A stretch of DNA of 64,000 nucleotides from Salpingoeca rosetta (Eukaryota; Protista; Choanoflagellata), in NCBI GenBank assembly GCA_033442325.1, contig JAWQFM010000004.1, forward strand, positions 428,979 to 492,978, in the 5' to 3' direction. Position 1 is the stretch's first letter; each line of letters begins with the position of its first letter. Under the pieces are notes generated by a model that saw nothing but the letters and a program-made list of their open reading frames with translations, was not told where the DNA came from and made no database searches. Positions 1,856 to 36,687 of this stretch are shown one piece after another. The translations under genes and the position numbers were made by a program.

Positions 1856-5016
<3,161 letters not shown>

Positions 5017-5456
5017 CTGTCGTATCGAGAGCAGACCAGGGTGCGATGACGTGAGCCGGGGTACATGAGCCAACGTGCGAGTCAGAAGACTTGAAATGTG
5101 ACGGGCGCGTGAAACTATCACTCCACAACCGACAGATGGACAAGGGTAGCGTCGCTATGTGTCGACTACACAAAACCCGCGGCAAGGCATGAAAGAGTGT
5201 GCAAAAGGTGCAGTGCAGTTGGTTCAAGCCAGCAGCCACAAGTGCTGGCTTGAGCACGCAAGGCGCCCAGTCGCCTTCACCACACGTGCCATGGCGAGCT
5301 CAAGCAGGAAACCTCACCTTCAAACATTATCCCTGCGCTGAGCAGCAATGAGAAAGCAAAGGCAGGAGGGTACGAATGCTGTTCGTGAAGGATAAACTCT
5401 GTCGATACACGTGAGACAACCAAGGCATGCAGATATATGAGTAAGGGTGAATACAT

Positions 5457-6067: not shown

Positions 6068-6100
6068 TTTTCGCGCCGCCAAATTTGAAGATTTTCGCGC
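6068..6100 (+). promoter_or_regulatory. Putative E2F/CDE-CHR elements in a bidirectional promoter
   Basis: TTTTCGCGC twice, flanking GCCGC-N4-TTTGAA. Confidence 0.45.
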
Positions 6101-6207
6101 TCAAACCTGTTTTGCAGCGGGCGACACCTCTCGTTGGGGCGACAGGCAGAGTTGTATGAACTGACAAGAAGAAGACGACAACGACCACGGCGAAGCGGTG
6201 TGTGGTG

Positions 6208-8715
6208 ATGATGGTCGCGGTCGTCGTGCTGGCAGTGGTGATGTTGGCAGTGGTGGTGGCGCAACGTGGAGGTGTAGTTGCGACGGCTGCAAGTACGACT
6301 GCCACGGAGGCTGCAACCGTAGCAAACGAGAAAGAGAATCGTGCGCACAGGAATGCATACCATGGGCTGACCAAGGAAGAAGAGAAGTTGTTGAGGTTGC
6401 ATGGACTGCGACGCTCCTCGTCCACAGGCATCCCCATTGACACCAATGGCTACCTTCTCTATTGCCCTTGCATGGGCCGCTTCGGCAACCAGGTGTGCTC
6501 TTGTCACAAAGGGGGTGGGTGAGTTGAGTTGCTGTGTGTCTGTGTGCGTGTGCTTGTTAGCGATTGTGTTTCTGGTTCTGTGTCTGGGTCTGTGTCTGTG
6601 TCTGTGTGCGTGTGTTTGTTTGCGATTGTGTTTCTGGTTCTATGTGTGGCTCTGTGTCTGTGTCTGTGTGCGTGTGTTTGTTTGCGAGTGTGCTTCTCGT
6701 TCTGTGTCTCTGTGTCTGGTGCTGTGTCTGTGGATGTGCGTGTTCCTGTGCGTGCGCCAACCCTGCCATTCACTGACATTGCATACCTTGGTTCCTTGTT
6801 GTGCTCCCTGACCATGACCTGCCAACCGCGCTTCATCACAGGCCGCGCACCTCATTGGCACGTTGTCAAAAGCAAAAGAGGTGAACAGGACACTCGTCGT
6901 GCCGCCATTTATCACTTACTCGCAGCGGCCCATTGGCTTGATCCCCTACACCAGCTACTTTGACCTGGCGTGAGTACACTTGATTCAAACACTCACAATG
7001 GTTGGTCCCGTCTGCGCTACTCGCCATTCCGTCGCCATTGGTCATGCTGTGCCCCTCTCCTCCTCCTTCACCAACATTACCCTCTTCACCAAACACAAAC
7101 ACCACCACCACCACCACCACCCTGCTCATCATCCCACGCTGCGCTGCCCCCTTGCGTTGACTGCGCCTCTGCCCATCACAGCACAACCGCCACCGCCACC
7201 TCTTCCTTCTCCTCCTCCTCCTCCTCCTCCTTCTTGTTTCCCCTCTTCTGTGCTGCCTCCCACAACACAAACTCATCACACCAACGCTCCTTCGCTGTCC
7301 ACAGGAAACTGCAAGAGTTCCACCGCGTGCTGCCCATGGAGACGTTCATGCAACTGCTGGCGCCGGAGGTGTGGCCGCCGGCACGCCGCCACATGTACTG
7401 CCCCCAGTTTCCATCCGCACACGGCTCTGATGCCCCCTCTGCAGTGGACTGCCGCACCAAGCAGGGTAACCCATTTGGGCCCTTCTGGGATGCGTTTGGT
7501 GTCGACTTCATCTCCGATCGAGCAGTTCCCCCGCACAGCGCAGACTGGGCAACAGCCCTGCCACCAAAGTCGCACCTGGTTGTGTCGCTGCGGGGTGCCC
7601 CTGCCCCCTTTCCCGAACGCCCCGAGCACAGATACATTGCGCAGTACATTGAGTGGAATGAAGAGGTGCATGCGAGCGTGGATGCGTGGATGATGCAGCA
7701 CCTGCAGCGGCCCGTTGTTGCGGCCCATCTGCGTGCTGGCGGTGACTGGCGTAACGCTTGCGCACGCGCGGCGGACACTATGCAAGAGTTTATGGCCAGC
7801 CCGCAATGCCCACACACCGGACCCATCACACAGGTCAATGAGTGCTCTGTGTGTCTGTGTGTGCGTGTCTGTGTGTCTGTGTCTGTGTCTGTGTGTCTTT
7901 GTATCTGTCTGTGTGTGTCTGTGTGTGTGTCTGTGTCTGTGTGTGTGCGTCAGTTTGTGTGTATGTTATTCTGTCTGTGTCCGTGTCTTTATGTCCATAC
8001 TCTGTCCCTCTGTTTCTGCGTCCCTCTGTTTCTGTGTCCCTCTGCCTGTCTGACTAACTGCCAGTGCGTGTGTCCGAGCGACGGGCATTCCTGTGCCTCT
8101 TGTCTCTGCCTCTACCTCTAACATATGATGTCGTTTTCCCTCATCATGGCTTGGCATGTTTGCAGGCCATGTGCCTGCCGACTGCGGAAGAGGCTGCGGC
8201 CAAGATTGCCGAAGAGGTGGTGAGGCAGGATGCGCGCTCTGTCTTCATTGCCACAGACAACTCTCATTACACCAAGCGCGTCGCTGCTATTGTCGAACAC
8301 CTTGTGTAAGACAAACGGCAGCCCATGGCTGACGCTGAGAGGGGGATGTGTCTCTGTGTGTCTGTGTGTGTGTGTGTGTGTGTATGCATGTGTGTGTGCG
8401 TCAGTGTGTGTGTGTGTATGCATGTGTGTGTGTGTTTCTTGTTTGCATGTGGTGCCGGTCATCTTACTGTGCTTCCAACGCACGTGTGCTCCCCCACTCT
8501 CTGACATTGACTTGCTCCCACCCACCCGCACAAATGTGTTCCCCCATGCAGCGATGCGCGTGTGGTGACGGCAGCCAAAGGATTCATGCACGACCTTGCT
8601 GTCCTGACAAAGTCGGACTTCTTCATCGGCAACTGCGTGAGCTCGTTTACCTCCTTTGTCACCCGGTACCGCCAAACCCGTGACCACCTCCCCATGACCT
8701 TCTTTGGACTCGACC

Positions 8716-8762
<47 letters not shown>

Positions 8763-8786
8763 GCCCACGACCCAACGGAATTTTGA
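6208..8786 (+). CDS. POFUT1: GDP-fucose protein O-fucosyltransferase 1 (GT65)
   Basis: Signal peptide; exons ~6208-6492, 6842-6969, 7304-7833, 8166-8305, 8552-8786 give [15 protein letters not shown]|[74 protein letters not shown], all diagnostic POFUT1 motifs; C-terminus PTEF resembles human RDEF. Confidence 0.96.
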
Positions 8787-9338
8787 CTTTGCCGTGGTGT
8801 CCTCTCGCCAAAGTCATTTTTGACATGGGCTTTGGCTTGAAAATTTGTGCATATTTTCAGTAAATCGTACGTAAGCGTTCCGATGCACACTCCTTCCTGC
8901 GTGCCACAAACGCCAACGCCACCACGAACAGACAGCCCACAGCAGAATGCGCTCAACAACAACACTGACACACAACAGGCAGCTGCGGCACATGCCTTCC
9001 TCCGTGTCGCGCATGCCAACTGTGGAAATGGAACAACCAACGCATGCCTTAGCTTCACAACAAGAAAACTTATGCCTGGCGGGATGTGCCGCCGTCTTGA
9101 GCGAGCCCTAAGCGAGCCTCGCAAACCATTTTCCTTTGCCTTTTCACCTCCCTGATCACCAGCAACCACCAACAACCACACTCGCCTCGAGTGCAAGCAC
9201 GACGACTCTCTCGCTTCATCCAGATCCATCCAGCACTTGAACTAACACCAAAGGCAGTCCAGCTGGCTTCAAGGAGAACGCCCGGCACACCCTAGATCAC
9301 ATCACACGCCCACAACAGACCTCGCTTGTGGCCGAGAG

Positions 9339-12300
9339 ATGGCTGGTGCGGCCACCGCAGCCACAGCAGTGCTGCTGGCACTGCTACTGGCCTCCCCAAA
9401 CGCACACGCAGGCGATTGGGAATGCCCGACTTACTCCGCCGTTGACAACTTCGAAGTCTCTTCCTACTCCAACAACGACGGCAACTTCAACTGGAACGGC
9501 CCTTGGGTCGAAGAGGACCCAAACGGCGGCGGCGTGACCTCCGGCAGGGTTCGCATCGAGAACGGCGATCTCCGCCTCGACGACATCGGCAGCACCCGCC
9601 AGCGCATCGCTGCCACGCGCTCTGTTGATCTCAGCAGCGCCGACCACAGCGCCACGCTCCAGCTGGAGTACCACACCGTCGGCGACGTCGAACGCACAGA
9701 CGAGTTTGTCATTGAAGTGTCAAAGGACGGCAATAGCTTTGTGGCCCTGGACACCATCAGCGCTACCTCCTGCCGCGACAACAAGCAATCCCGCATCTAC
9801 ACCATCTCCAAGTACGCGTCCCGCCACACCACCATCCGCATCCGCATCAAGGACGGCTTCCGTGGCCGCGACGAAGGCATCATCATCGACTGGATTGCCG
9901 TCACCTTCTCCTCGTGCAGCCCCTATTCATCCACAACCACAACACGGGCAGCCACAACCACCACCACCAAGGCACGCACCACGACCACGACACGGGCACC
10001 CACCACCACCACGACACGCGCTCCCACCACGACCACGACACGCGCTCCCACCACGACCACGACAGAGCGGGCCACGACAACGGCAGGCGGACCATGCGAT
10101 CCTAACCCGTGCCAGAACGGCGGCACCTGTGAGGTGTACTGGTGGAAGTACTACAAGTGCTACTGCCCAGACGGCTTCCGTGGCTCAAACTGCGAGGAGC
10201 AGGTGACAACCACATAACACNNNNNNNNNNNNNNNNNNNNNNNNNNNNNNNNNNNNNNNNNNNNNNNNNNNNNNNNNNNNNNNNNNNNNNNNNNNNNNNN
10301 NNNNNNNNNNNNNNNNNNNNCAGCAACCCGTGCCTGAACGGCGGCACGTGCAAGTCCAAGGACCACGGCCGGGACTACAAGTGCTACTGCCCCCACGGGT
10401 ACAAGGGCGAGCGCTGCGAGATCAACCGCTACACCACCACGCCCTCGCGCCCCACCACCACGGAGAACGACATCTGCGACAGCAACCCATGCCTGAACGG
10501 CGGCACGTGCAAGTCCAAGGACCACGGCCGGGACTACAAGTGCTACTGCCCCCACGGGTACAAGGGCGAGCGCTGCGAGATCAACCGCTACACCACCACG
10601 CCCTCGCGCCCCACCACCACGGAGAACGACATCTGCGACACCAACCCGTGACTGAACGGCGGCACGTGCAAAGTCCAAAGGACCACGGCCGGGACTACAA
10701 GTGCTACTGCCCCCACGGTACAAGGGCCGAGCGCTGCGAGATCAATCCGCTACACCACCACGTCCTCGCGACCCACCAGCACGGAGAACGACATCTGCGA
10801 CACCAACCCATGCCTGAACGGCGGCACGTGCAAGTCCAAGGACCACGGCCGGGACTACAAGTGCTACTGCCCCCACGGGTACAAGGGCGAGCGCTGCGAG
10901 ATCAACCGCTACACCACCACGCCCTCGCGCCCCACCACCACGGAGAACGACATCTGCGACAGCAACCCATGCCTGAACGGCGGCACGTGCAAGTCCAAGG
11001 ACCACGGCCGGGACTACAAGTGCTACTGCCCCCACGGGTACAAGGGCGAGCGCTGCGAGATCAACCGCTACACCACCACGCCCTCGCGCCCCACCACCAC
11101 GGAGAACGACATCTGCGACACCAACCCGTGCCTGAACGGCGGCACGTGCAAGTCCAAGGACCACGGCCGGGACTACAAGTGCTACTGCCCCCACGGGTAC
11201 AAGGGCGAGCGCTGCGAGATCAACCGCTACACCACCACGCCCTCGCGCCCCAGCACCACGGAGAACGACATCTGCGACAGCAACCCATGCCTGAACGGCG
11301 GCACGTGCAAGTCCAAGGACCACGGCCGGGACTACAAGTGCTACTGCCCCCACGGGTACAAGGGCGAGCGCTGCGAGATCAACCGCTACACCACCACGCC
11401 CTCGCGCCCCACCACCACGGAGAACGACATCTGCGACACCAACCCGTGCCTGAACGGCGGCACGTGCAAGTCCAAGGACCACGGCCGGGACTACAAGTGC
11501 TACTGCCCCCACGGGTACAAGGGCGAGCGCTGCGAGATCAACCGCTACACCACCACGCCCTCGCGCCCCACCACCACGGAGAACGACATCTGCGACACCA
11601 ACCCGTGCCTGAACGGCGGCACGTGCAAGTCCAAGGACCACGGCCGGGACTACAAGTGCTACTGCCCCCACGGGTACAAGGGCGAGCGCTGCGAGATCAA
11701 CCGCTACACCACCACGCCCTCGCGCCCCACCACCACGGAGAACGACATCTGCGACACCAACCCGTGCCTGAACGGCGGCACGTGCAAGTCCAAGGACCAC
11801 GGCCGGGACTACAAGTGCTACTGCCCCCACGGGTACAAGGGCGAGCGCTGCGAGATCAACCGCTACACCACCACGCCCTCGCGCCCCACCACCACGGAGA
11901 ACGACATCTGCGACACCAACCCGTGCCTGAACGGCGGCACGTGCAAGTCCAAGGACCACGGCCGGGACTACAAGTGCTACTGCCCCCACGGGTACAAGGG
12001 CGAGCGCTGCGAGATCAACCGCTACACCACCACGCCCTCGCGCCCCACCACCACGGAGAACGACATCTGCGACACCAACCCGTGCCTGAACGGCGGCACG
12101 TGCAAGTCCAAGGACCACGGCCGGGACTACAAGTGCTACTGCCCCCACGGGTACAAGGGCGAGCGCTGCGAGATCAACCGCTACACCACCACGCCCTCGC
12201 GCCCCACCACCACGGAGAACGACATCTGCGACACCAACCCATGCCTGAACGGCGGCACGTGCAAGTCCAAGGACCACGGCCGGGACTACAAGTGCTACTG

Positions 12301-15300
12301 CCCCCACGGGTACAAGGGCGAGCGCTGCGAGATCAACCGCTACACCACCACGCCCTCGCGCCCCACCACCACGGAGAACGACATCTGCGACAGCAACCCA
12401 TGCCTGAACGGCGGCACGTGCAAGTCCAAGGACCACGGCCGGGACTACAAGTGCTACTGCCCCCACGGGTACAAGGGCGAGCGCTGCGAGATCAACCGCT
12501 ACAGCACCACGCCCTCGCGCCCCACCATCACGGAGATCGACATCTGCGACAGCAACCCATGCCTGAACGGCGGCACGTGCAAGTCCAAGGACCACGGCCG
12601 GGACTACAAGTGCTACTGCCCCCACGGGTACAAGGGCGAGCGCTGCGAGATCAACCGCTACACCACCACGCCCTCGCGCCCCACCACCACGGAGAACGAC
12701 ATCTGCGACACCAACCCGTGCCTGAACGGCGGCACGTGCAAGTCCAAGGACCACGGCCGGGACTACAAGTGCTACTGCCCCCACGGGTACAAGGGCGAGC
12801 GCTGCGAGATCAACCGCTACACCACCACGCCCTCGCGCCCCACCACCACGGAGAACGACATCTGCGACACCAACCCGTGCCTGAACGGCGGCACGTGCAA
12901 GTCCAAGGACCACGGCCGGGACTACAAGTGCTACTGCCCCCACGGGTACAAGGGCGAGCGCTGCGAGATCAACCGCTACACCACCACGCCCTCGCGCCCC
13001 ACCACCACGGAGAACGACATCTGCGACACCAACCCATGCCTGAACGGCGGCACGTGCAAGTCCAAGGACCACGGCCGGGACTACAAGTGCTACTGCCCCC
13101 ACGGGTACAAGGGCGAGCGCTGCGAGATCAACCGCTACACCACCACGCCCTCGCGCCCCACCACCACGGAGAACGACATCTGCGACAGCAACCCATGCCT
13201 GAACGGCGGCACGTGCAAGTCCAAGGACCACGGCCGGGACTACAAGTGCTACTGCCCCCACGGGTACAAGGGCGAGCGCTGCGAGATCAACCGCTACACC
13301 ACCACGCCCTCGCGCCCCACCACCACGGAGAACGACATCTGCGACACCAACCCGTGCCTGAACGGCGGCACGTGCAAGTCCAAGGACCACGGCCGGGACT
13401 ACAAGTGCTACTGCCCACACGGGTACAAGGGCGAGCGCTGCGAGATCAACCGCTACACCACCACGCCCTCGCGCCCCACCACTACGCGTGCACCCCCAAC
13501 CACTACCGGTGATGGTCCCTGTGAACCAAACCCATGCGAGGTACGTGTGCTGTTTAGCTTTTTCATATGTTTTGTTTTGTGGTCAAATGACTTTAGTTGT
13601 CGTTATGTACCTGTGCTCATGCATTCTTTGATGCAACTTTACAGGGGTGCATGCAACCGCACACATATGTGCGTTACACTCATCTCATTACTCACCCATC
13701 CACGTCGTTTTTGTGTGTTTTCTTTGCGTTTGATAGAATGGCGGTACGTGCGAGGTGTACTGGTGGCTCTTCTTCACGTGCCACTGCCCTGAGGGCGTCT
13801 CTGGACGCACCTGCGAACATGTCGACACCACCGCAACTACACGTGCTCCAACCACTACAACGACAGAGGCGACACCCACACGTCCGCGTACGACCACACC
13901 GCGCACAACAGCTGCAACAACGCCCAGGCCAACCACAACAACGACACCAGCAGCCACGACCCTGCCTGGCTACACATGCTTGAAGGCACGCCAGTGTGAG
14001 GCAGCTCCGCCAGGCGAGAAGTACTGCAACACGGCTGTGCTGCAGCTGAACTGTGGTCCACGGAGAGTCATCAAGGTTGCGCATGCGTTCTACGGTCGTC
14101 GTGACAAGGACGTGTGCCCTGATCCGCTGCTCCGTGACGGCAGCACAGACTTGACAACGTGCTCCATCCAGGCAACTGACCTTGTTGCAGACATTTGCGA
14201 CGGCGAAGAGGCGTGCCGTGTGTCTGCATGCAACTCTGTCTTCTCCGATCCGTGCGTGGACACGTACAAATACCTCGAGGTCGACTACCAGTGTGTCGAT
14301 GAGGACGATGTTGACGAGGAGGTTCGCTGTGGCGAGCACACGACCACACGGGCACCCACCACCACCACTGAGCGTCGCACCACAACAACGGAGCGCCCAA
14401 CTACCACCACTGAGCGTCGCACCACAACAACGGAGCGCCCAACTACCACCACGGAGCGTCGCACCACAACAACTGAGCGTCGCACCACAACAACGGAGCG
14501 CCCAACTACCACTACGGAGCGTCGCACCACAACAACGGAGCGCCCAACTACCACCACTGAGCGTCGCACCACAACAACGGAGCGTCGCACCACAACAACT
14601 GAGCGTCGCACCACAACAACGGAGCGCCCAACTACCACTACGGAGCGTCGCACCACAACAACGGAGCGCCCAACCACCACCACAGAGCGTCGCACTACGA
14701 CAACGGACCGCCCAACTACCACCACGAAGCGTCGCACCAAGACAACGGACCGCCCAACTACCACCACGGAGCGCCCAACAACAACCACGGAGCGTCGTAC
14801 CACGACCACTGAGCGCCCAACTACCACCACGAAGCGTCGCACCAAGACAACGGACCGCCCAACTACCACCACGGAGCGCCCAACAACAACCACGGAGCGT
14901 CGTACCACGACCACTGAGCGCCCAACTACCACAACGGAACGCCGCACCACGACAACGGAACGCCCAACTACCACAACGGACCGCCCAACTACCACCACTG
15001 AGCGTCGCACCACAACAACTGAGCGTCGCACTACGACCACTCCTGGTGGAGATGTGTGTGGTGACTTGACTGCGACACGTGACTTCCTTGGCAACCTCAT
15101 CTTCTGCGGTCAGTCTGGCCATGCGTGCCCAGGTGGAAGCTTCTGTGGCAGCCGCGACTACTGCTGTGACCGCGCGGAGCCATCCACCACCATCACGGAG
15201 CGTCGCACCACGACAACTGAACGCCCAACTACCACAACGGAGCGCCGCACCACGACAACGGAACGCCCAACTACCACAACGGAACGCCGCACCACGACAA

Positions 15301-17357
15301 CGGAACGCCCAACTACCACAACGGACCGCCCAACTACCACCACTGAGCGTCGCACCACAACAACTGAGCGTCGCACTACGACCACTCCTGGTGGAGATGT
15401 GTGTGGTGACTTGACTGCGACACGTGACTTCCTTGGCAGCCTCATCTTCTGCGGTCAGTCTGGCCATGCGTGCCCAGGTGGAAGCTTCTGTGGCAGCCGC
15501 GACTACTGCTGTGACCGCGCGGAGCCTTCCACCACGACAACGGAGCGCCAAACTACCACCGCTGAGCGTCGCACCACGACAACAGCGCCTGGCACCCGTA
15601 CAGAAACGCGCACAGAGACTAAGATGGAGACAACGCGTGCACGGACCACCACGGCTCCTCGCACTACAGCGACGGCAACTGCCACCGCCACACACACGCG
15701 CACACGCACCGAGGCCACCACGACAGTCCCTGCCACACACACGCGCACACGCACCGAGGCCACCACCACAGCGACGGCCACGCGTACAGCGACACGCACA
15801 CGCACCGATGCGGCCAGCACCACCACACCCATGTCTCGCATCCACTATGTCACCATCACCTTCCCCGACATTGACTTCTTCAGCGTGTTCACACACCCGT
15901 CCTCTGCGCGTGCGCTTGAGTTTGCGGGCGCCGTGTGGGAGAGGCTGGTCGAGGAGGACGTTGCCGGACCCAAGGAGATCCGCACCATCGACGTGTCGCT
16001 CGGTTCGAACGGTATCGACGTGATTGTCGGCGCCATCAACGCCGACGCCGCCGACCGTATTGAGCGCTACGTTGGCGCCCGCGCGTTCTGCATGCCCGTG
16101 TCGGAGGTGCAGATTGTGCTGTGCACGAGCGGTGCGCATCGCCAGCTCACCACCACGCGTGACACGCGCGCAACCACGACGGGCACGTCCGCGCGTCGCT
16201 GGACCACCACCACGACCGTGCGCATCAGCAACGGTGAACGCGTCGGTGCAGACAACAGCAACGGTGGCAACGGTGGCAACGGCGACAGTGGCTCCACGGG
16301 TGACGGGTCCGGGTTCAAGTTCTCCACCACGACCAGCATCATCCTTGGCGTGGGCACCCTCATCATCGCCATCGCTGTGATTGCCGTGCTTGTTGTTCGG
16401 CGCCAGGCCAAGCGACGCGAGGCGCTGCGGTCGGAGCAGTTTGCATTCAGCGACCACCGCCGCCGCAAGTCCAGCATCACCGCCTTTGCGCAGGCCCTGC
16501 ACTCGATGAGCGCGACAGACGTGTCCACGCCGCCTGCGTACGCCAGCCCGCAGCACAGCGCGCCGCCATCCTCCACAGCACCAACAGAGGTGGAGGTTGC
16601 TCGCATCAACACGGCCCACGCCCACCACGCATACCACCACGCCGACCCCAGCAGCGACGCGTCCAGTGCAACGTACGACCGCGCAACCTACGAGCGGGCC
16701 AGCTCTGCAGGGTATGATCCAATGGCGCAGAGCACAACGGCAGGCGGCATCCGCCTACTGCCTGGTCGCTCCACGCACGGCGATGACGCTGTGGTGGCAG
16801 GGTACACCGCCGCCAGCGCTTCTGGCGACTATGACATTGCAAGCAACCACTATGGATACTCCTCGACGCGTTACGACAACGCAGACCCGTATGCTGTTGC
16901 AGAGCCTGACATGACGGCGCCCGAGCAGGCACACATTCTCTCGCGCCAGCGCAGGTTGTCCCGTGGGAACTTGCTTTCTCCACGCACGAACGCCCTGTAC
17001 ACCCGCAACGCCCCCGAGATTGTTGCTGCGTCCAACGTGACGCGCGCAAACGCGCCGCCGCCACCGCCATTCCCGCTGCACGAGAGCAAGCGCAAGAAGC
17101 GCGTCGTTATCTCGGCTGATGTGCGCGACAACGTGCCGCTCGGTGCACCGGCGAAACCGCCCCGCTCGCGCACGAGCATGGACGAGAGCAGCACGGACGA
17201 CGCAGATGTTGATGCGGAGATGCAGCGGCTGCACCTCGGGGCAGGTCGGCGATCAGAGGAGCACGAGCTCAAGTCGATTCTGTCGCGGGCGCGCGCTGCA
17301 ACACCCACGTCTGCACAACTCCGACACAGGACCCCAACGCCGTCCCTTGATGTCTGA
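9339..17357 (+). CDS. Large type-I membrane protein: signal peptide, beta-sandwich, >=22 EGF repeats, SUEL lectin, Thr-rich mucin stalk, two Cys-rich repeats, SEA-like domain, TM, Tyr-rich tail
   Basis: ORF 9339-10217 runs up to the N gap (its TAA lies in probably unreliable sequence at the gap edge); EGF array 10321-13490; phase-0 intron 13541-13736 splits the last EGF (CEPNPCE|NGGTC); reading frame continues to 17357 with TM IILGVGTLIIAIAVIAVLVV followed by RRQAKRR. Continuity across the gap is inferred. Confidence 0.85.
10221..10320. other. Assembly gap (100 N)
   Basis: Run of n characters. Confidence 1.
10321..13490 (+). repeat. Coding tandem array of 20 near-identical 159-bp units (53 aa: EGF plus T/P linker)
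   Basis: Unit ICD(S/T)NPCLNGGTCKSKDHGRDYKCYCPHGYKGERCEINRYTTTPSRPTTTEND recurs every 159 bp; copy 3 has indels and a TGA. Confidence 0.97.
14350..15580 (+). repeat. 21-bp coding minisatellite (TTTTERR/TTTTERP) plus a 345-bp duplication containing a 6-Cys module
   Basis: Heptapeptide repeats; GGDVCGDLTATRDFLG(N/S)LIFCGQSGHACPGGSFCGSRDYCC occurs at ~15045 and ~15390. Confidence 0.92.
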
Positions 17358-36022: not shown

Positions 36023-36687
36023 NNNNNNNNNNNNNNNNNNNNNNNNNNNNNNNNNNNNNNNNNNNNNNNNNNNNNNNNNNNNNNNNNNNNNNNNNNNNNN
36101 NNNNNNNNNNNNNNNNNNNNNNNNNNNNNNNNNNNNNNNNNNNNNNNNNNNNNNNNNNNNNNNNNNNNNNNNNNNNNNNNNNNNNNNNNNNNNNNNNNNN
36201 NNNNNNNNNNNNNNNNNNNNNNNNNNNNNNNNNNNNNNNNNNNNNNNNNNNNNNNNNNNNNNNNNNNNNNNNNNNNNNNNNNNNNNNNNNNNNNNNNNNN
36301 NNNNNNNNNNNNNNNNNNNNNNNNNNNNNNNNNNNNNNNNNNNNNNNNNNNNNNNNNNNNNNNNNNNNNNNNNNNNNNNNNNNNNNNNNNNNNNNNNNNN
36401 NNNNNNNNNNNNNNNNNNNNNNNNNNNNNNNNNNNNNNNNNNNNNNNNNNNNNNNNNNNNNNNNNNNNNNNNNNNNNNNNNNNNNNNNNNNNNNNNNNNN
36501 NNNNNNNNNNNNNNNNNNNNNNNNNNNNNNNNNNNNNNNNNNNNNNNNNNNNNNNNNNNNNNNNNNNNNNNNNNNNNNNNNNNNNNNNNNNNNNNNNNNN
36601 NNNNNNNNNNNNNNNNNNNNNNNNNNNNNNNNNNNNNNNNNNNNNNNNNNNNNNNNNNNNNNNNNNNNNNNNNNNNNNNNNNNNNNN
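36023..36687. other. Assembly gap (N run)
   Basis: Run of n characters flanked by atypical, probably low-quality sequence. Confidence 1.

What the first reader, a model, noticed from the sequence alone, without database searches (positions are those of the whole stretch)
6208..17357. POFUT1 directly upstream of a multi-EGF surface protein full of its own target motif: candidate Notch-independent enzyme-substrate module
Seen: the POFUT1 stop (8786) is about 550 bp from the ATG (9339) of a co-oriented gene whose in-frame EGF repeats all read C-x-N-G-G-T-C (CQNGGTC, CLNGGTC, CENGGTC). Established: POFUT1 fucosylates C2-xxxx-(S/T)-C3 in folded EGF repeats and aids their ER export; in animals the key substrate is Notch. 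Seen: this protein has no LNR or ankyrin repeats, so it is not Notch. Inference: a physically linked glycosyltransferase-substrate pair, operon-like in logic, in a probable unicellular relative of animals. It could reflect an ancestral adhesion or colony-formation role of O-fucosylation.
Basis: partly seen in the sequence, partly recalled or inferred. Interest (0 to 1): 0.9.

Follow-up and report, generated by a model that had tools for sequence, protein, structure and literature searches.

The report
POFUT1 beside an EGF-repeat mucin gene
A working O-fucosyltransferase gene (POFUT1) of a choanoflagellate-type genome sits just upstream of a membrane protein whose 21 intact EGF repeats carry its target motif, so the protein is a likely substrate, but the side-by-side position is not kept in relatives and looks like an accident of gene order.

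Summary
POFUT1 (6208-8786, five exons, 438 aa, all key motifs) is real, spliced and polyadenylated at about 8877. A co-oriented gene starts 552 bp after its stop, at ATG 9339. It encodes a membrane mucin-like protein of about 2,570 aa. It has 22 EGF repeats: 21 read C-x-N-G-G-T-C intact and one unit is disrupted. It also has a SUEL lectin domain and Thr-rich repeats, and no LNR or ankyrin repeats.

Caveats:
- The reading frame changes across the N gap.
- A TAA lies 3 bases before the gap. Read contigs do not support it.
- The disrupted unit shows error-like homopolymer indels.

This gene holds 20 of the genome's 50 exact motif hits, so it is the richest candidate POFUT1 substrate.

The "linked module" reading fails its own tests:
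- At least 24 other loci on many contigs carry consensus EGFs.
- In Monosiga brevicollis and a second relative, a PRMT gene lies downstream of POFUT1, not an EGF gene.
- POFUT2 is not next to a thrombospondin-repeat gene.
- In two RNA runs POFUT1 is level while the EGF gene differs about 8-fold and stays at least 20-fold lower.

Verdict: a likely enzyme-substrate pair whose adjacency is probably lineage-specific chance. The scan's other notes here are on this same stretch, not on other DNA.

The parts
1856..5257 (-). Upstream, divergently transcribed polyQ-rich gene (longest ORF). It is head-to-head with POFUT1. This is the neighbour that is conserved with M. brevicollis.
   Evidence: A 27-aa motif at 3461-3541 is 78% identical (E 2e-11) to the gene lying head-to-head with M. 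brevicollis POFUT1. There is no significant Pfam family.
6086..8877 (+). POFUT1 transcript, from the start of the RNA contig to the poly(A) site.
   Evidence: RNA contig of run X4 covers 6086-6489/6839-6969/7305-7830/8163-8305/8552-8705. Four GT..AG joints appear in raw stranded RNA reads of X21 and X22. Poly(A) loose ends lie at 8877.
6208..6492 (+). POFUT1 CDS exon 1: hydrophobic signal anchor and the [10 protein letters not shown] motif.
6842..6969 (+). POFUT1 CDS exon 2.
7305..7833 (+). POFUT1 CDS exon 3: [17 protein letters not shown] (catalytic Arg motif) and MASPQC.
   Evidence: 5kxh E 7e-42; Pfam O-FucT
8166..8305 (+). POFUT1 CDS exon 4 (FIATD).
8552..8786 (+). POFUT1 CDS exon 5: GNCVSSFT and a 16-Gln run. 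The protein ends ...AHDPTEF, followed by the stop.
8878..9338 (+). Spacer between the POFUT1 poly(A) site and the ATG of the EGF gene. It is transcribed at a low level (5'UTR of the EGF gene or POFUT1 read-through).
   Evidence: Depth is about 1 in X22 and falls from 3 to 0.4 in X21. An X4 RNA contig runs continuously over 8774-9461.
9339..10213 (+). EGF gene, first coding stretch. Signal peptide about 9339-9410. Beta-sandwich N-domain about 9411-9920. Thr-rich linker. EGF1 with CQNGGTC, about 10095-10199.
   Evidence: ORF and translation. Pfam EGF 9e-8. The N-domain model has pLDDT 61 and gives MAM/CBM/Eph-LBD-like jelly-roll matches with TM about 0.5.
10214..10320 (.). Unsupported end letters TAACAC (they carry the TAA at 10215-10217) plus the 100-N assembly gap.
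   Evidence: Contigs of X1 and X4 read CATA plus linker-like sequence after 10213. The gap is not bridged.
10321..13540 (+). Array of 20 units of 159 bp (53 aa: EGF plus a Thr/Pro linker), followed by the first half of the last EGF. Nineteen units are intact with C-L-N-G-G-T-C.
   Evidence: TRF: 19.9 copies, 98% identical. Unit table. Pfam EGF 1.8e-137, 17 stretches. DNA-run word depth is 365 against about 20 for single-copy sequence, which fits about 18 copies.
10634..10795 (+). Disrupted array unit: a stop in place of C2 plus frameshifts.
   Evidence: Alignment to the unit consensus shows 4 single-base insertions, 1 deletion and 5 substitutions.
13541..13736 (+). Intron (GTACGT...GATAG) that splits the last EGF. 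Splicing gives C-E-N-G-G-T-C.
   Evidence: Sequence reading. It is not covered by the reads laid.
13737..17357 (+). Last exon. Rest of EGF22. SUEL lectin, about 14046-14294. ERRTTTT/ERPTTTT mucin repeats, 14357-15386, with two Cys-rich modules. Juxtamembrane domain, about 15816-16154. Transmembrane helix, 16338-16397. Cytoplasmic tail of about 320 aa. Stop at 17357.
   Evidence: Pfam SUEL_Lectin 3.8e-19; TRF; translation.

Best explanation
Two separate, co-oriented genes.

The first encodes the genome's single POFUT1, an ER-type GDP-fucose:protein O-fucosyltransferase. It is intact, spliced and steadily expressed.

The second encodes a type I membrane, mucin-like surface protein of about 2,570 aa. 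Its parts, in order, are: a signal peptide, a beta-sandwich N-domain, 22 EGF repeats separated by Thr/Pro linkers, a SUEL (galactose/rhamnose-type) lectin domain, long Thr-rich repeats, a transmembrane helix and a cytoplasmic tail.

Inferred mechanism: as each EGF folds in the ER, POFUT1 transfers fucose from GDP-fucose to the Thr of C2-L/Q/E-N-G-G-T-C3. A GMD gene for making GDP-fucose is present. With 21 intact sites this protein is the most site-rich candidate substrate in the genome, but at least 24 other loci also carry consensus EGFs.

The adjacency is best read as a lineage-specific accident of gene order in a compact genome, not as a conserved or co-regulated module. The arrangement shared with relatives is POFUT1 head-to-head with the upstream polyQ gene and tail-to-tail with a PRMT gene. 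Here the EGF gene occupies the downstream place. The EGF array is young or kept uniform by concerted evolution (units 98-100% identical).

Shown: gene structures, motifs, motif counts, gene order in two relatives, and RNA levels in three runs. Inferred: fucosylation itself, surface location, and the lack of functional coupling.
For: POFUT1 identity and integrity.

Single POFUT1: the only other O-FucT locus matches POFUT2 structures at about 1e-23.

Substrate fit:
- Six-Cys EGFs with C2-x4-T-C3 in 21 units.
- The unit matches the EGFs co-crystallised with mouse POFUT1: factor VII EGF1 in 5kxh_B at 6e-7 and a Notch1 EGF in 5ky9_B at 3e-7. It also matches Notch1, DLL1, factor IX and tPA EGFs.
- GMD gene at C23:180.8-183.4 kb.

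Substrates elsewhere in the genome:
- 30 further exact motif hits at about 20 places.
- 78 further PF00008 matches on 18 contigs, a lower bound.
- 18 of the 20 fetched EGF stretches hold at least one consensus EGF. The largest count elsewhere is 10 sites, against 21 here.

No conserved linkage:
- M. brevicollis has PRMT, bHLH and HMG genes downstream of POFUT1 and no six-Cys EGF pattern within 10 kb on either side.
- A second relative's contig, L023, also has POFUT1 followed by a convergent PRMT gene.
- The upstream neighbour is conserved.

No parallel pairs: thrombospondin-repeat (TSR) loci lie on C21, C13 and C22, while POFUT2 is on C2. The GT90 and Fringe-domain loci are not near the detected EGF loci.

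Separate and uncoupled expression:
- Poly(A) end at 8877.
- POFUT1 depth is about 15-25 in both X21 and X22.
- The unique part of the EGF gene has depth 0 in X21 and about 0.6-1.2 in X22. The array bin has about 2 against about 15.
- In X4 the contig depths are 758 for POFUT1 against 30-43 for the EGF gene.
Against: - With at least 24 substrate-type loci and an assumed 11,000-12,000 genes (my assumption, not a tool result), the chance that one of POFUT1's two immediate neighbours is such a gene is only about 0.4-1%. Allowing for the eight transferase loci that could have told the same story, it is about 3-8%.
- The neighbour is not just any EGF gene but the one with by far the most perfect sites.
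- RNA covers the whole spacer at a low level, and one RNA contig runs from the POFUT1 3'UTR into the EGF gene. Some transcriptional read-through coupling is therefore not excluded.
- Only two RNA runs from one study, plus one set of contigs, were compared.
- Only two relatives, both distant (46-52% identity in the largest POFUT1 exon), could be checked for gene order. A module confined to this lineage remains possible.
Confidence: 0.7

Rival explanations
1. A selected but lineage-specific enzyme-substrate neighbourhood. After the EGF gene arrived next to POFUT1, the pair was kept together because shared chromatin or POFUT1 read-through transcription helps to match enzyme supply to a protein with more than 20 sites.
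For: - Single-test adjacency probability is about 0.4-1%, and the neighbour is the richest motif carrier in the genome.
- Both genes lie on the same strand, with only 461 nt between the poly(A) site and the ATG.
- Low, continuous RNA cover of the spacer, and an RNA contig spanning 8774-9461.
Against: - POFUT1 has a clear poly(A) end.
- The EGF gene is at least 20-fold lower than POFUT1 and changes about 8-fold between two runs while POFUT1 stays level.
- No linkage in M. brevicollis or in L023.
- No parallel POFUT2-TSR or GT90-EGF pairs.
- POFUT1 must also serve at least 24 unlinked loci.
Confidence: 0.12
2. The downstream gene is a decaying or misassembled pseudogene, so no substrate protein is made and the motif richness is only a satellite-like tandem array.
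For: - TAA at 10215-10217.
- Frame change across the gap.
- One unit with a stop and frameshifts.
- Very low RNA level in two runs.
Against: - Nineteen units and the 1,200-codon last exon are open.
- The changes among intact units are mostly conservative: a Ser/Thr toggle, plus T>S, T>I and N>I in the linker.
- The TAA is contradicted by contigs of two runs.
- The damaged unit shows homopolymer indels typical of read errors next to a gap.
- RNA contigs cover the 5' exon in X4.
Confidence: 0.08
3. One reading: an ancestral, pre-animal POFUT1-substrate module for adhesion or colony formation that predates Notch.
For: - POFUT1 is present in choanoflagellates that lack a true Notch. Gazave 2009 (PMC2770060) calls O-fut holozoan-specific.
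- LNR matches lie elsewhere in this genome, not in this gene.
- The neighbour is a surface protein with lectin and EGF domains.
Against: - M. brevicollis and a second relative share a different downstream neighbour, PRMT. That arrangement is therefore the likelier ancestral one.
- The array units are 98-100% identical, which points to recent expansion or homogenisation.
Confidence: 0.03

Closest known systems
Animal POFUT1 / Drosophila O-fut1 (GT65; structures 5kxh, 5ux6, 3zy2)
   Same: - Same Pfam family.
- 43% identity to a shark POFUT1 and 36% to a Drosophila one over about 360 aa.
- The [10 protein letters not shown], HLRxGxDW, ATD and GNCVSSFT motifs are kept.
- N-terminal hydrophobic anchor.
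   Different: - The host has no Notch-type receptor in this gene neighbourhood.
- It carries a 16-Gln run near the C-terminus.
- It ends in PTEF rather than the KDEL-like RDEF that I recall for the human enzyme, so ER retrieval is unverified.
M. brevicollis MONBRDRAFT_25935 (POFUT1)
   Same: - 49.6% identity over 345 aa.
- The same head-to-head upstream neighbour.
   Different: Its downstream neighbour is a convergent PRMT gene, not an EGF gene.
O-fucosylated EGF modules of factor VII/IX, tPA, Notch and Delta
   Same: - Six-Cys EGF with C2-x-N-G-G-S/T-C3.
- Direct sequence matches to the EGFs co-crystallised with POFUT1.
   Different: - Here there are 20 nearly identical copies in tandem, each followed by a Thr/Pro mucin-type linker.
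- No calcium-binding D-x-D/N-E-C prefix.
- No LNR, NOD, ankyrin or DSL partners.
Membrane-tethered mucins and the M. brevicollis EGF-repeat transmembrane 'protoNotch' discussed in PMC4810162
   Same: A type I membrane protein with tandem EGF repeats, heavily Thr-rich stretches, and a juxtamembrane globular domain before the transmembrane helix.
   Different: - It adds a SUEL lectin and a MAM/CBM-like N-domain.
- Orthology to the M. brevicollis protein was not testable here.
- The SEA-like look of the juxtamembrane domain is only an impression (model pLDDT 51).

Membership tests
POFUT1 (GT65, Pfam O-FucT PF10250) | Match to the family profile above the curated cut-off | tested here: met
   69.4 bits against 31.5 for exon 3. 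Further exon matches are collinear with it.
POFUT1 (GT65, Pfam O-FucT PF10250) | Closer to POFUT1 than to POFUT2 | tested here: met
   Solved POFUT1s score 7e-42 to 2e-25. The genome's other O-FucT locus matches POFUT2 structures instead.
POFUT1 (GT65, Pfam O-FucT PF10250) | Conserved donor-binding and catalytic motifs (GRFGNQ, HLRxGxDW with the catalytic Arg, [11 protein letters not shown]) | tested here: met
   All are present in the 438-aa spliced product. The assignment of roles to the motifs rests on my knowledge of the mouse and human structures.
POFUT1 (GT65, Pfam O-FucT PF10250) | Intact, expressed gene | tested here: met
   Four RNA-supported GT..AG introns, no internal stop, a poly(A) end at 8877, and depth about 15-25 in two RNA runs.
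POFUT1 (GT65, Pfam O-FucT PF10250) | ER residence through a C-terminal KDEL-like signal | tested here: inconclusive
   The C-terminus reads ...AHDPTEF, which is not a canonical KDEL-like tetrapeptide.
POFUT1 (GT65, Pfam O-FucT PF10250) | Transfers fucose to Ser/Thr of folded EGF | not testable with these tools
   Needs an enzyme assay or glycoproteomics.
EGF repeat with O-fucose consensus | Six cysteines in EGF spacing and a Pfam EGF match | tested here: met
   PF00008 E 1.8e-137 over 17 stretches in 10796-13534, and 9e-8 for EGF1.
EGF repeat with O-fucose consensus | C2-x-x-x-x-(S/T)-C3 | tested here: met
   Met in 21 intact units (1 QNGGT, 19 LNGGT, 1 ENGGT after splicing). One further unit has C2 replaced by a stop.
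EGF repeat with O-fucose consensus | Fucose actually attached | not testable with these tools
   Needs mass spectrometry (+146 Da on the LNGGTC peptide).
Notch receptor | LNR repeats, NOD/NODP region and ankyrin repeats in the same protein | tested here: not met
   Pfam finds only EGF and SUEL_Lectin in this gene. LNR matches lie on C8 and C12.
Conserved enzyme-substrate gene cluster (operon-like module) | Linkage kept in related genomes | tested here: not met
   M. brevicollis and the L023 organism have POFUT1 followed by a convergent PRMT gene, with no EGF nearby.
Conserved enzyme-substrate gene cluster (operon-like module) | Shared transcript or co-variation of expression | tested here: not met
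   POFUT1 has its own poly(A) site at 8877 and is level between runs, while the EGF gene is at least 20-fold lower and differs about 8-fold. Low read-through is not excluded.
Conserved enzyme-substrate gene cluster (operon-like module) | Adjacency beyond chance | tested here: inconclusive
   About 0.4-1% for a single test and about 3-8% after allowing for eight comparable enzyme loci. This rests on lower-bound locus counts and an assumed gene number.
Conserved enzyme-substrate gene cluster (operon-like module) | The same logic at sister enzymes (POFUT2 with TSR genes; GT90 or Fringe-domain genes with EGF genes) | tested here: not met
   POFUT2 is on C2, while the TSR loci are on C21, C13 and C22. 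The GT90 and Fringe-domain loci are far from the detected EGF loci.
SUEL-type (galactose/rhamnose-binding) lectin domain | Match to PF02140 above the cut-off | tested here: met
   69.3 bits against 31.4, over residues 98-180 of the last exon's ORF.

The most novel reading that the evidence does not exclude
In this lineage the EGF-mucin gene landed directly behind POFUT1 and is partly driven by POFUT1 read-through, or its 5'UTR overlaps the POFUT1 3'UTR. The single fucosyltransferase and its most demanding client, with more than 20 sites per molecule, would then form a young, transcriptionally coupled glycosyltransferase-substrate pair. That would be a rare eukaryotic case of enzyme-substrate clustering. 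It would also be the first named non-Notch client of POFUT1 in a unicellular relative of animals.
Probability: 0.1. Interest if true: 0.6.

Novelty: new member of a known kind. Interest (0 to 1): 0.33.

Why it matters
What POFUT1 does in organisms that lack Notch is an open question about how animal signalling began.

This locus does not show an ancestral enzyme-substrate module. It does name a concrete top candidate client: one surface protein that holds 40% of the genome's perfect C-x-N-G-G-T-C motifs. That turns the question into a direct experiment, namely glycoproteomics on one repeated peptide or a POFUT1 knockout with this protein as the read-out.

It also warns that adjacency in a compact genome is weak evidence. 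Gene order in two relatives was enough to separate the conserved neighbour (the upstream divergent gene) from the non-conserved one.

Tried and rejected
- Protein searches with the largest POFUT1 exon and with a 12-sequence profile never returned this genome's own protein. The profile search was swamped by animal POFUT1s. A third search, with the S. helianthica protein as query, found the M. brevicollis protein.
- The representative search gave only unnamed short contigs as closer relatives. The best was 63% identical, on contigs of at most 1.5 kb, too short for gene order.
- L022, another relative's contig of 4.3 kb, has too little downstream DNA to show a neighbour.
Only 20 of about 38 EGF stretches were inspected, so all locus counts are lower bounds.
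- The gap could not be bridged. The only joints across it have 20-letter sides and come from motif similarity.
- A PRMT orthologue was sought near POFUT1 in this genome. Only weak hits on C23 and C9 were found.
- The juxtamembrane domain model was too poor (pLDDT 51) to search with, so 'SEA-like' is not claimed. The N-domain model is of modest quality (pLDDT 61), so its MAM/CBM/Eph-LBD-like fold is only a lead.
- A word search of earlier findings gave nothing.

Full report
**What is there**

The window is G000:C4:428979-492978 of a 55.4-Mb, 68-contig eukaryotic genome. Its introns are rich in CA/TG microsatellites. The nearest named POFUT1 proteins are from Monosiga brevicollis (49.6% identity over 345 aa) and Salpingoeca helianthica (45%), ahead of animals (36-43%). 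The host is therefore choanoflagellate-like.

**POFUT1**

- The ORF pieces between 6208 and 8786 match Pfam O-FucT.
- They match solved POFUT1 structures: mouse 5kxh at 7e-42, human 5ux6, and C. elegans 3zy2.
- Raw stranded RNA reads from two runs and an RNA contig from a third give four GT..AG introns: 6493-6841, 6970-7304, 7834-8165 and 8306-8551. Poly(A) tails start after 8877.
- The spliced CDS is 438 aa with no stop. It keeps [36 protein letters not shown] and GNCVSSFT.
- It starts with a hydrophobic anchor. It ends in a 16-Gln run followed by AHDPTEF, so a KDEL-like retrieval signal is not evident.
- The only other O-FucT locus in the genome (C2:229 kb) matches POFUT2 structures at about 1e-23. 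This is therefore the single POFUT1.
- A multi-exon GMD gene is present, so GDP-fucose can be made.

**The downstream gene**

The ATG at 9339 opens a signal peptide. After it come these parts:

- A domain of about 170 aa with no Pfam family. A modest model (pLDDT 61) looks like a MAM/CBM/Eph-LBD-type jelly roll.
- A Thr-rich linker.
- EGF1, with CQNGGTC.
- The 100-N gap.
- A 159-bp tandem array at 10324-13486, with 19.9 copies that are 98% identical. Each unit encodes C-D-(T/S)-N-P-C-L-N-G-G-T-C-KSKDHGRDYK-C-Y-C-PHGYKGER-C-EIN followed by a Thr/Pro linker.
- A last EGF that is split by an intron at 13541-13736 and reads CENGGTC after splicing.
- A final exon encoding a SUEL lectin domain, ERRTTTT/ERPTTTT mucin repeats with two Cys-rich modules, a juxtamembrane domain, a transmembrane helix and a tail of about 320 aa.

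There is no LNR or ankyrin repeat in this gene. LNR matches lie on C8 and C12.

**The gap and the frames (tested first, as asked)**

- Codons before the gap start at positions 0 mod 3. The array is read at 2 mod 3. A gap of 3k+2 bases would join the two frames. Because the 100 N are a convention, the mismatch is uninformative.
- A TAA at 10215-10217 sits 3 bases before the gap. Contigs of a DNA-like run (X1) and of an RNA run (X4) leave the window after 10213 and read CATA followed by linker-like sequence. The TAACAC end letters are therefore unsupported.
- No contig bridges the gap. Word depth in X1 is about 365 on the array unit against about 20 on single-copy sequence. That fits about 18 copies, so the gap hides few units.
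- One unit (10634-10795) carries TGC>TGA, four single-base homopolymer insertions, one deletion and four other substitutions. This looks like read error next to a gap, but that is not proven.

**Are the repeats POFUT1 substrates?**

Twenty-one intact EGFs fit C2-x4-T-C3. The unit matches Notch1, DLL1, factor IX and tPA EGFs. It also matches the very EGFs crystallised in complex with mouse POFUT1: factor VII EGF1 in 5kxh_B (6e-7) and Notch1 EGFs in 5ky9_B and 5ky0_B. By my recollection C-x-N-G-G-S/T-C is the classical O-fucose site of factor VII, uPA and tPA. With a single POFUT1 in the genome, I put the enzyme-substrate relation at about 85%. Attachment of fucose cannot be tested here.

**Is the adjacency more than chance?**

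- The exact DNA pattern for C-x-N-G-G-T-C hits 50 times in the genome, against 3 for the control. Twenty hits are in this gene and 30 lie at about 20 other places.
- A six-frame PF00008 search gives 99 matches, which is a lower bound. Of these, 21 are in this gene and 78 lie on 18 contigs.
- In the 20 EGF stretches I could fetch, 18 hold at least one six-Cys EGF with C2-x4-S/T-C3, 43 sites in all. The largest count elsewhere is 10, at C24:533-553 kb.
- With at least 24 such loci and an assumed 11,000-12,000 genes, the chance that one of POFUT1's two neighbours is such a gene is about 0.4-1%.
- Eight enzyme loci could have told the same story: POFUT1, POFUT2, three GT90 loci and three Fringe-domain loci. 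Allowing for them raises the chance to about 3-8%.
- None of the other seven is next to a detected EGF or TSR locus.

**Gene order in relatives**

- M. brevicollis POFUT1 (MONBRDRAFT_25935) is followed by a convergent PRMT gene, then a bHLH gene and an HMG-box gene. No six-Cys EGF pattern occurs within 10 kb on either side.
- A genomic contig from a second, unnamed relative (L023) also shows POFUT1 followed by a convergent PRMT gene. Its exons are 66-74% identical to the M. brevicollis PRMT gene.
- In contrast, the gene head-to-head with POFUT1 in M. brevicollis shares a 27-aa motif (78% identical, E 2e-11) with the window's upstream minus-strand ORF.
- The conserved neighbour is therefore the upstream one. 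The EGF gene occupies a place that PRMT holds in the two relatives.
- PRMT-like hits in this genome lie on other contigs.

**Expression**

- In two stranded RNA runs from one study, POFUT1 exons have depth of about 15-25 in both.
- The unique 5' part of the EGF gene has depth 0 in X21 and 0.6-1.2 in X22. The array bin has about 2 in X21 and about 15 in X22.
- In RNA contigs of a third run, X4, the depths are 758 for POFUT1 against 30-43 for the EGF gene.
- The EGF gene is thus at least 20-fold lower than POFUT1 and varies while POFUT1 is level.
- The spacer is covered at a low level, and an X4 contig runs from 8774 to 9461. Read-through, or a long 5'UTR that overlaps the POFUT1 3'UTR, is therefore not excluded.

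**What is already known**

Gazave et al. 2009 (PMC2770060) list O-fut as holozoan-specific, so POFUT1 in choanoflagellates is already known. PMC4810162 discusses an EGF-repeat transmembrane 'protoNotch' in M. brevicollis. PMC8022947 places the Fringe-domain genes of M. brevicollis and S. rosetta with C1GALT, and reports a true Fringe only in Acanthoeca, so elongation of O-fucose is unverified here. I found no paper on a POFUT1-EGF gene adjacency.

**Verdict**

The EGF-mucin protein is a strong candidate POFUT1 client and a useful experimental handle. The 'module' is not conserved, is not paralleled at sister enzymes, and is not co-expressed in the data at hand. Lineage-specific chance adjacency is the best explanation (0.7). 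A young coupled pair is the main rival (about 0.1).

Noticed in passing
window 1856-5257 (-), motif at 3461-3541; L021 6139-8266 (-): The polyQ-rich gene head-to-head with POFUT1 shares a 27-aa Cys-rich motif (RGPYRCGRCGQMLKGHTCPYK region, 78% identical) with the gene head-to-head with M. brevicollis POFUT1. This would be a conserved divergent gene pair, possibly with a shared promoter, across distant choanoflagellates. No Pfam family was found.
   Followed up: partly
window 10321-13490: At the O-glucose position (C1-x-S-x-P-C2), 7 of the 20 units read C-D-S-N-P-C and 13 read C-D-T-N-P-C, in otherwise near-identical repeats. GT90 (POGLUT-like) loci exist on C35, C22 and C5.
   Followed up: partly
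window 9411-9920: The N-terminal domain of the EGF protein, about 170 aa, has no Pfam family. Language-model neighbours are mostly unnamed, partly bacterial clusters, plus Cleaved_Adhesin, MAM and CBM families. A pLDDT-61 model matches MAM, CBM and Eph ligand-binding jelly rolls at TM about 0.5.
   Followed up: partly
window 14877-15547: A 345-bp direct repeat (1.9 copies, 96% identical) duplicates a Cys-rich module of about 48 aa (PGGDVCGDLTATRDFLG..FCGQSGHACPGGSFCGSRDYCCDR) embedded in the mucin repeats. It has no family match.
   Followed up: no
window 8720-8770: POFUT1 carries a 16-Gln (CAG/CAA) run just before its C-terminus and ends in PTEF rather than a KDEL-like signal. Read contigs break at this repeat.
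   Followed up: no
window 10330: G>A in 3 of 6 RNA reads of run X22 at the first array unit. This is probably a variant between repeat copies rather than editing.
   Followed up: no
window 36023-36687: A second assembly gap (665 N). It explains the GC dip to 0.33 in the 36-38 kb composition bin.
   Followed up: no
L023 (Logan contig SRR29340320_269484) and L021: The POFUT1 and convergent PRMT gene order is shared by M. brevicollis and an unnamed relative. This is a small conserved microsynteny block that is broken in the window's genome.
   Followed up: partly
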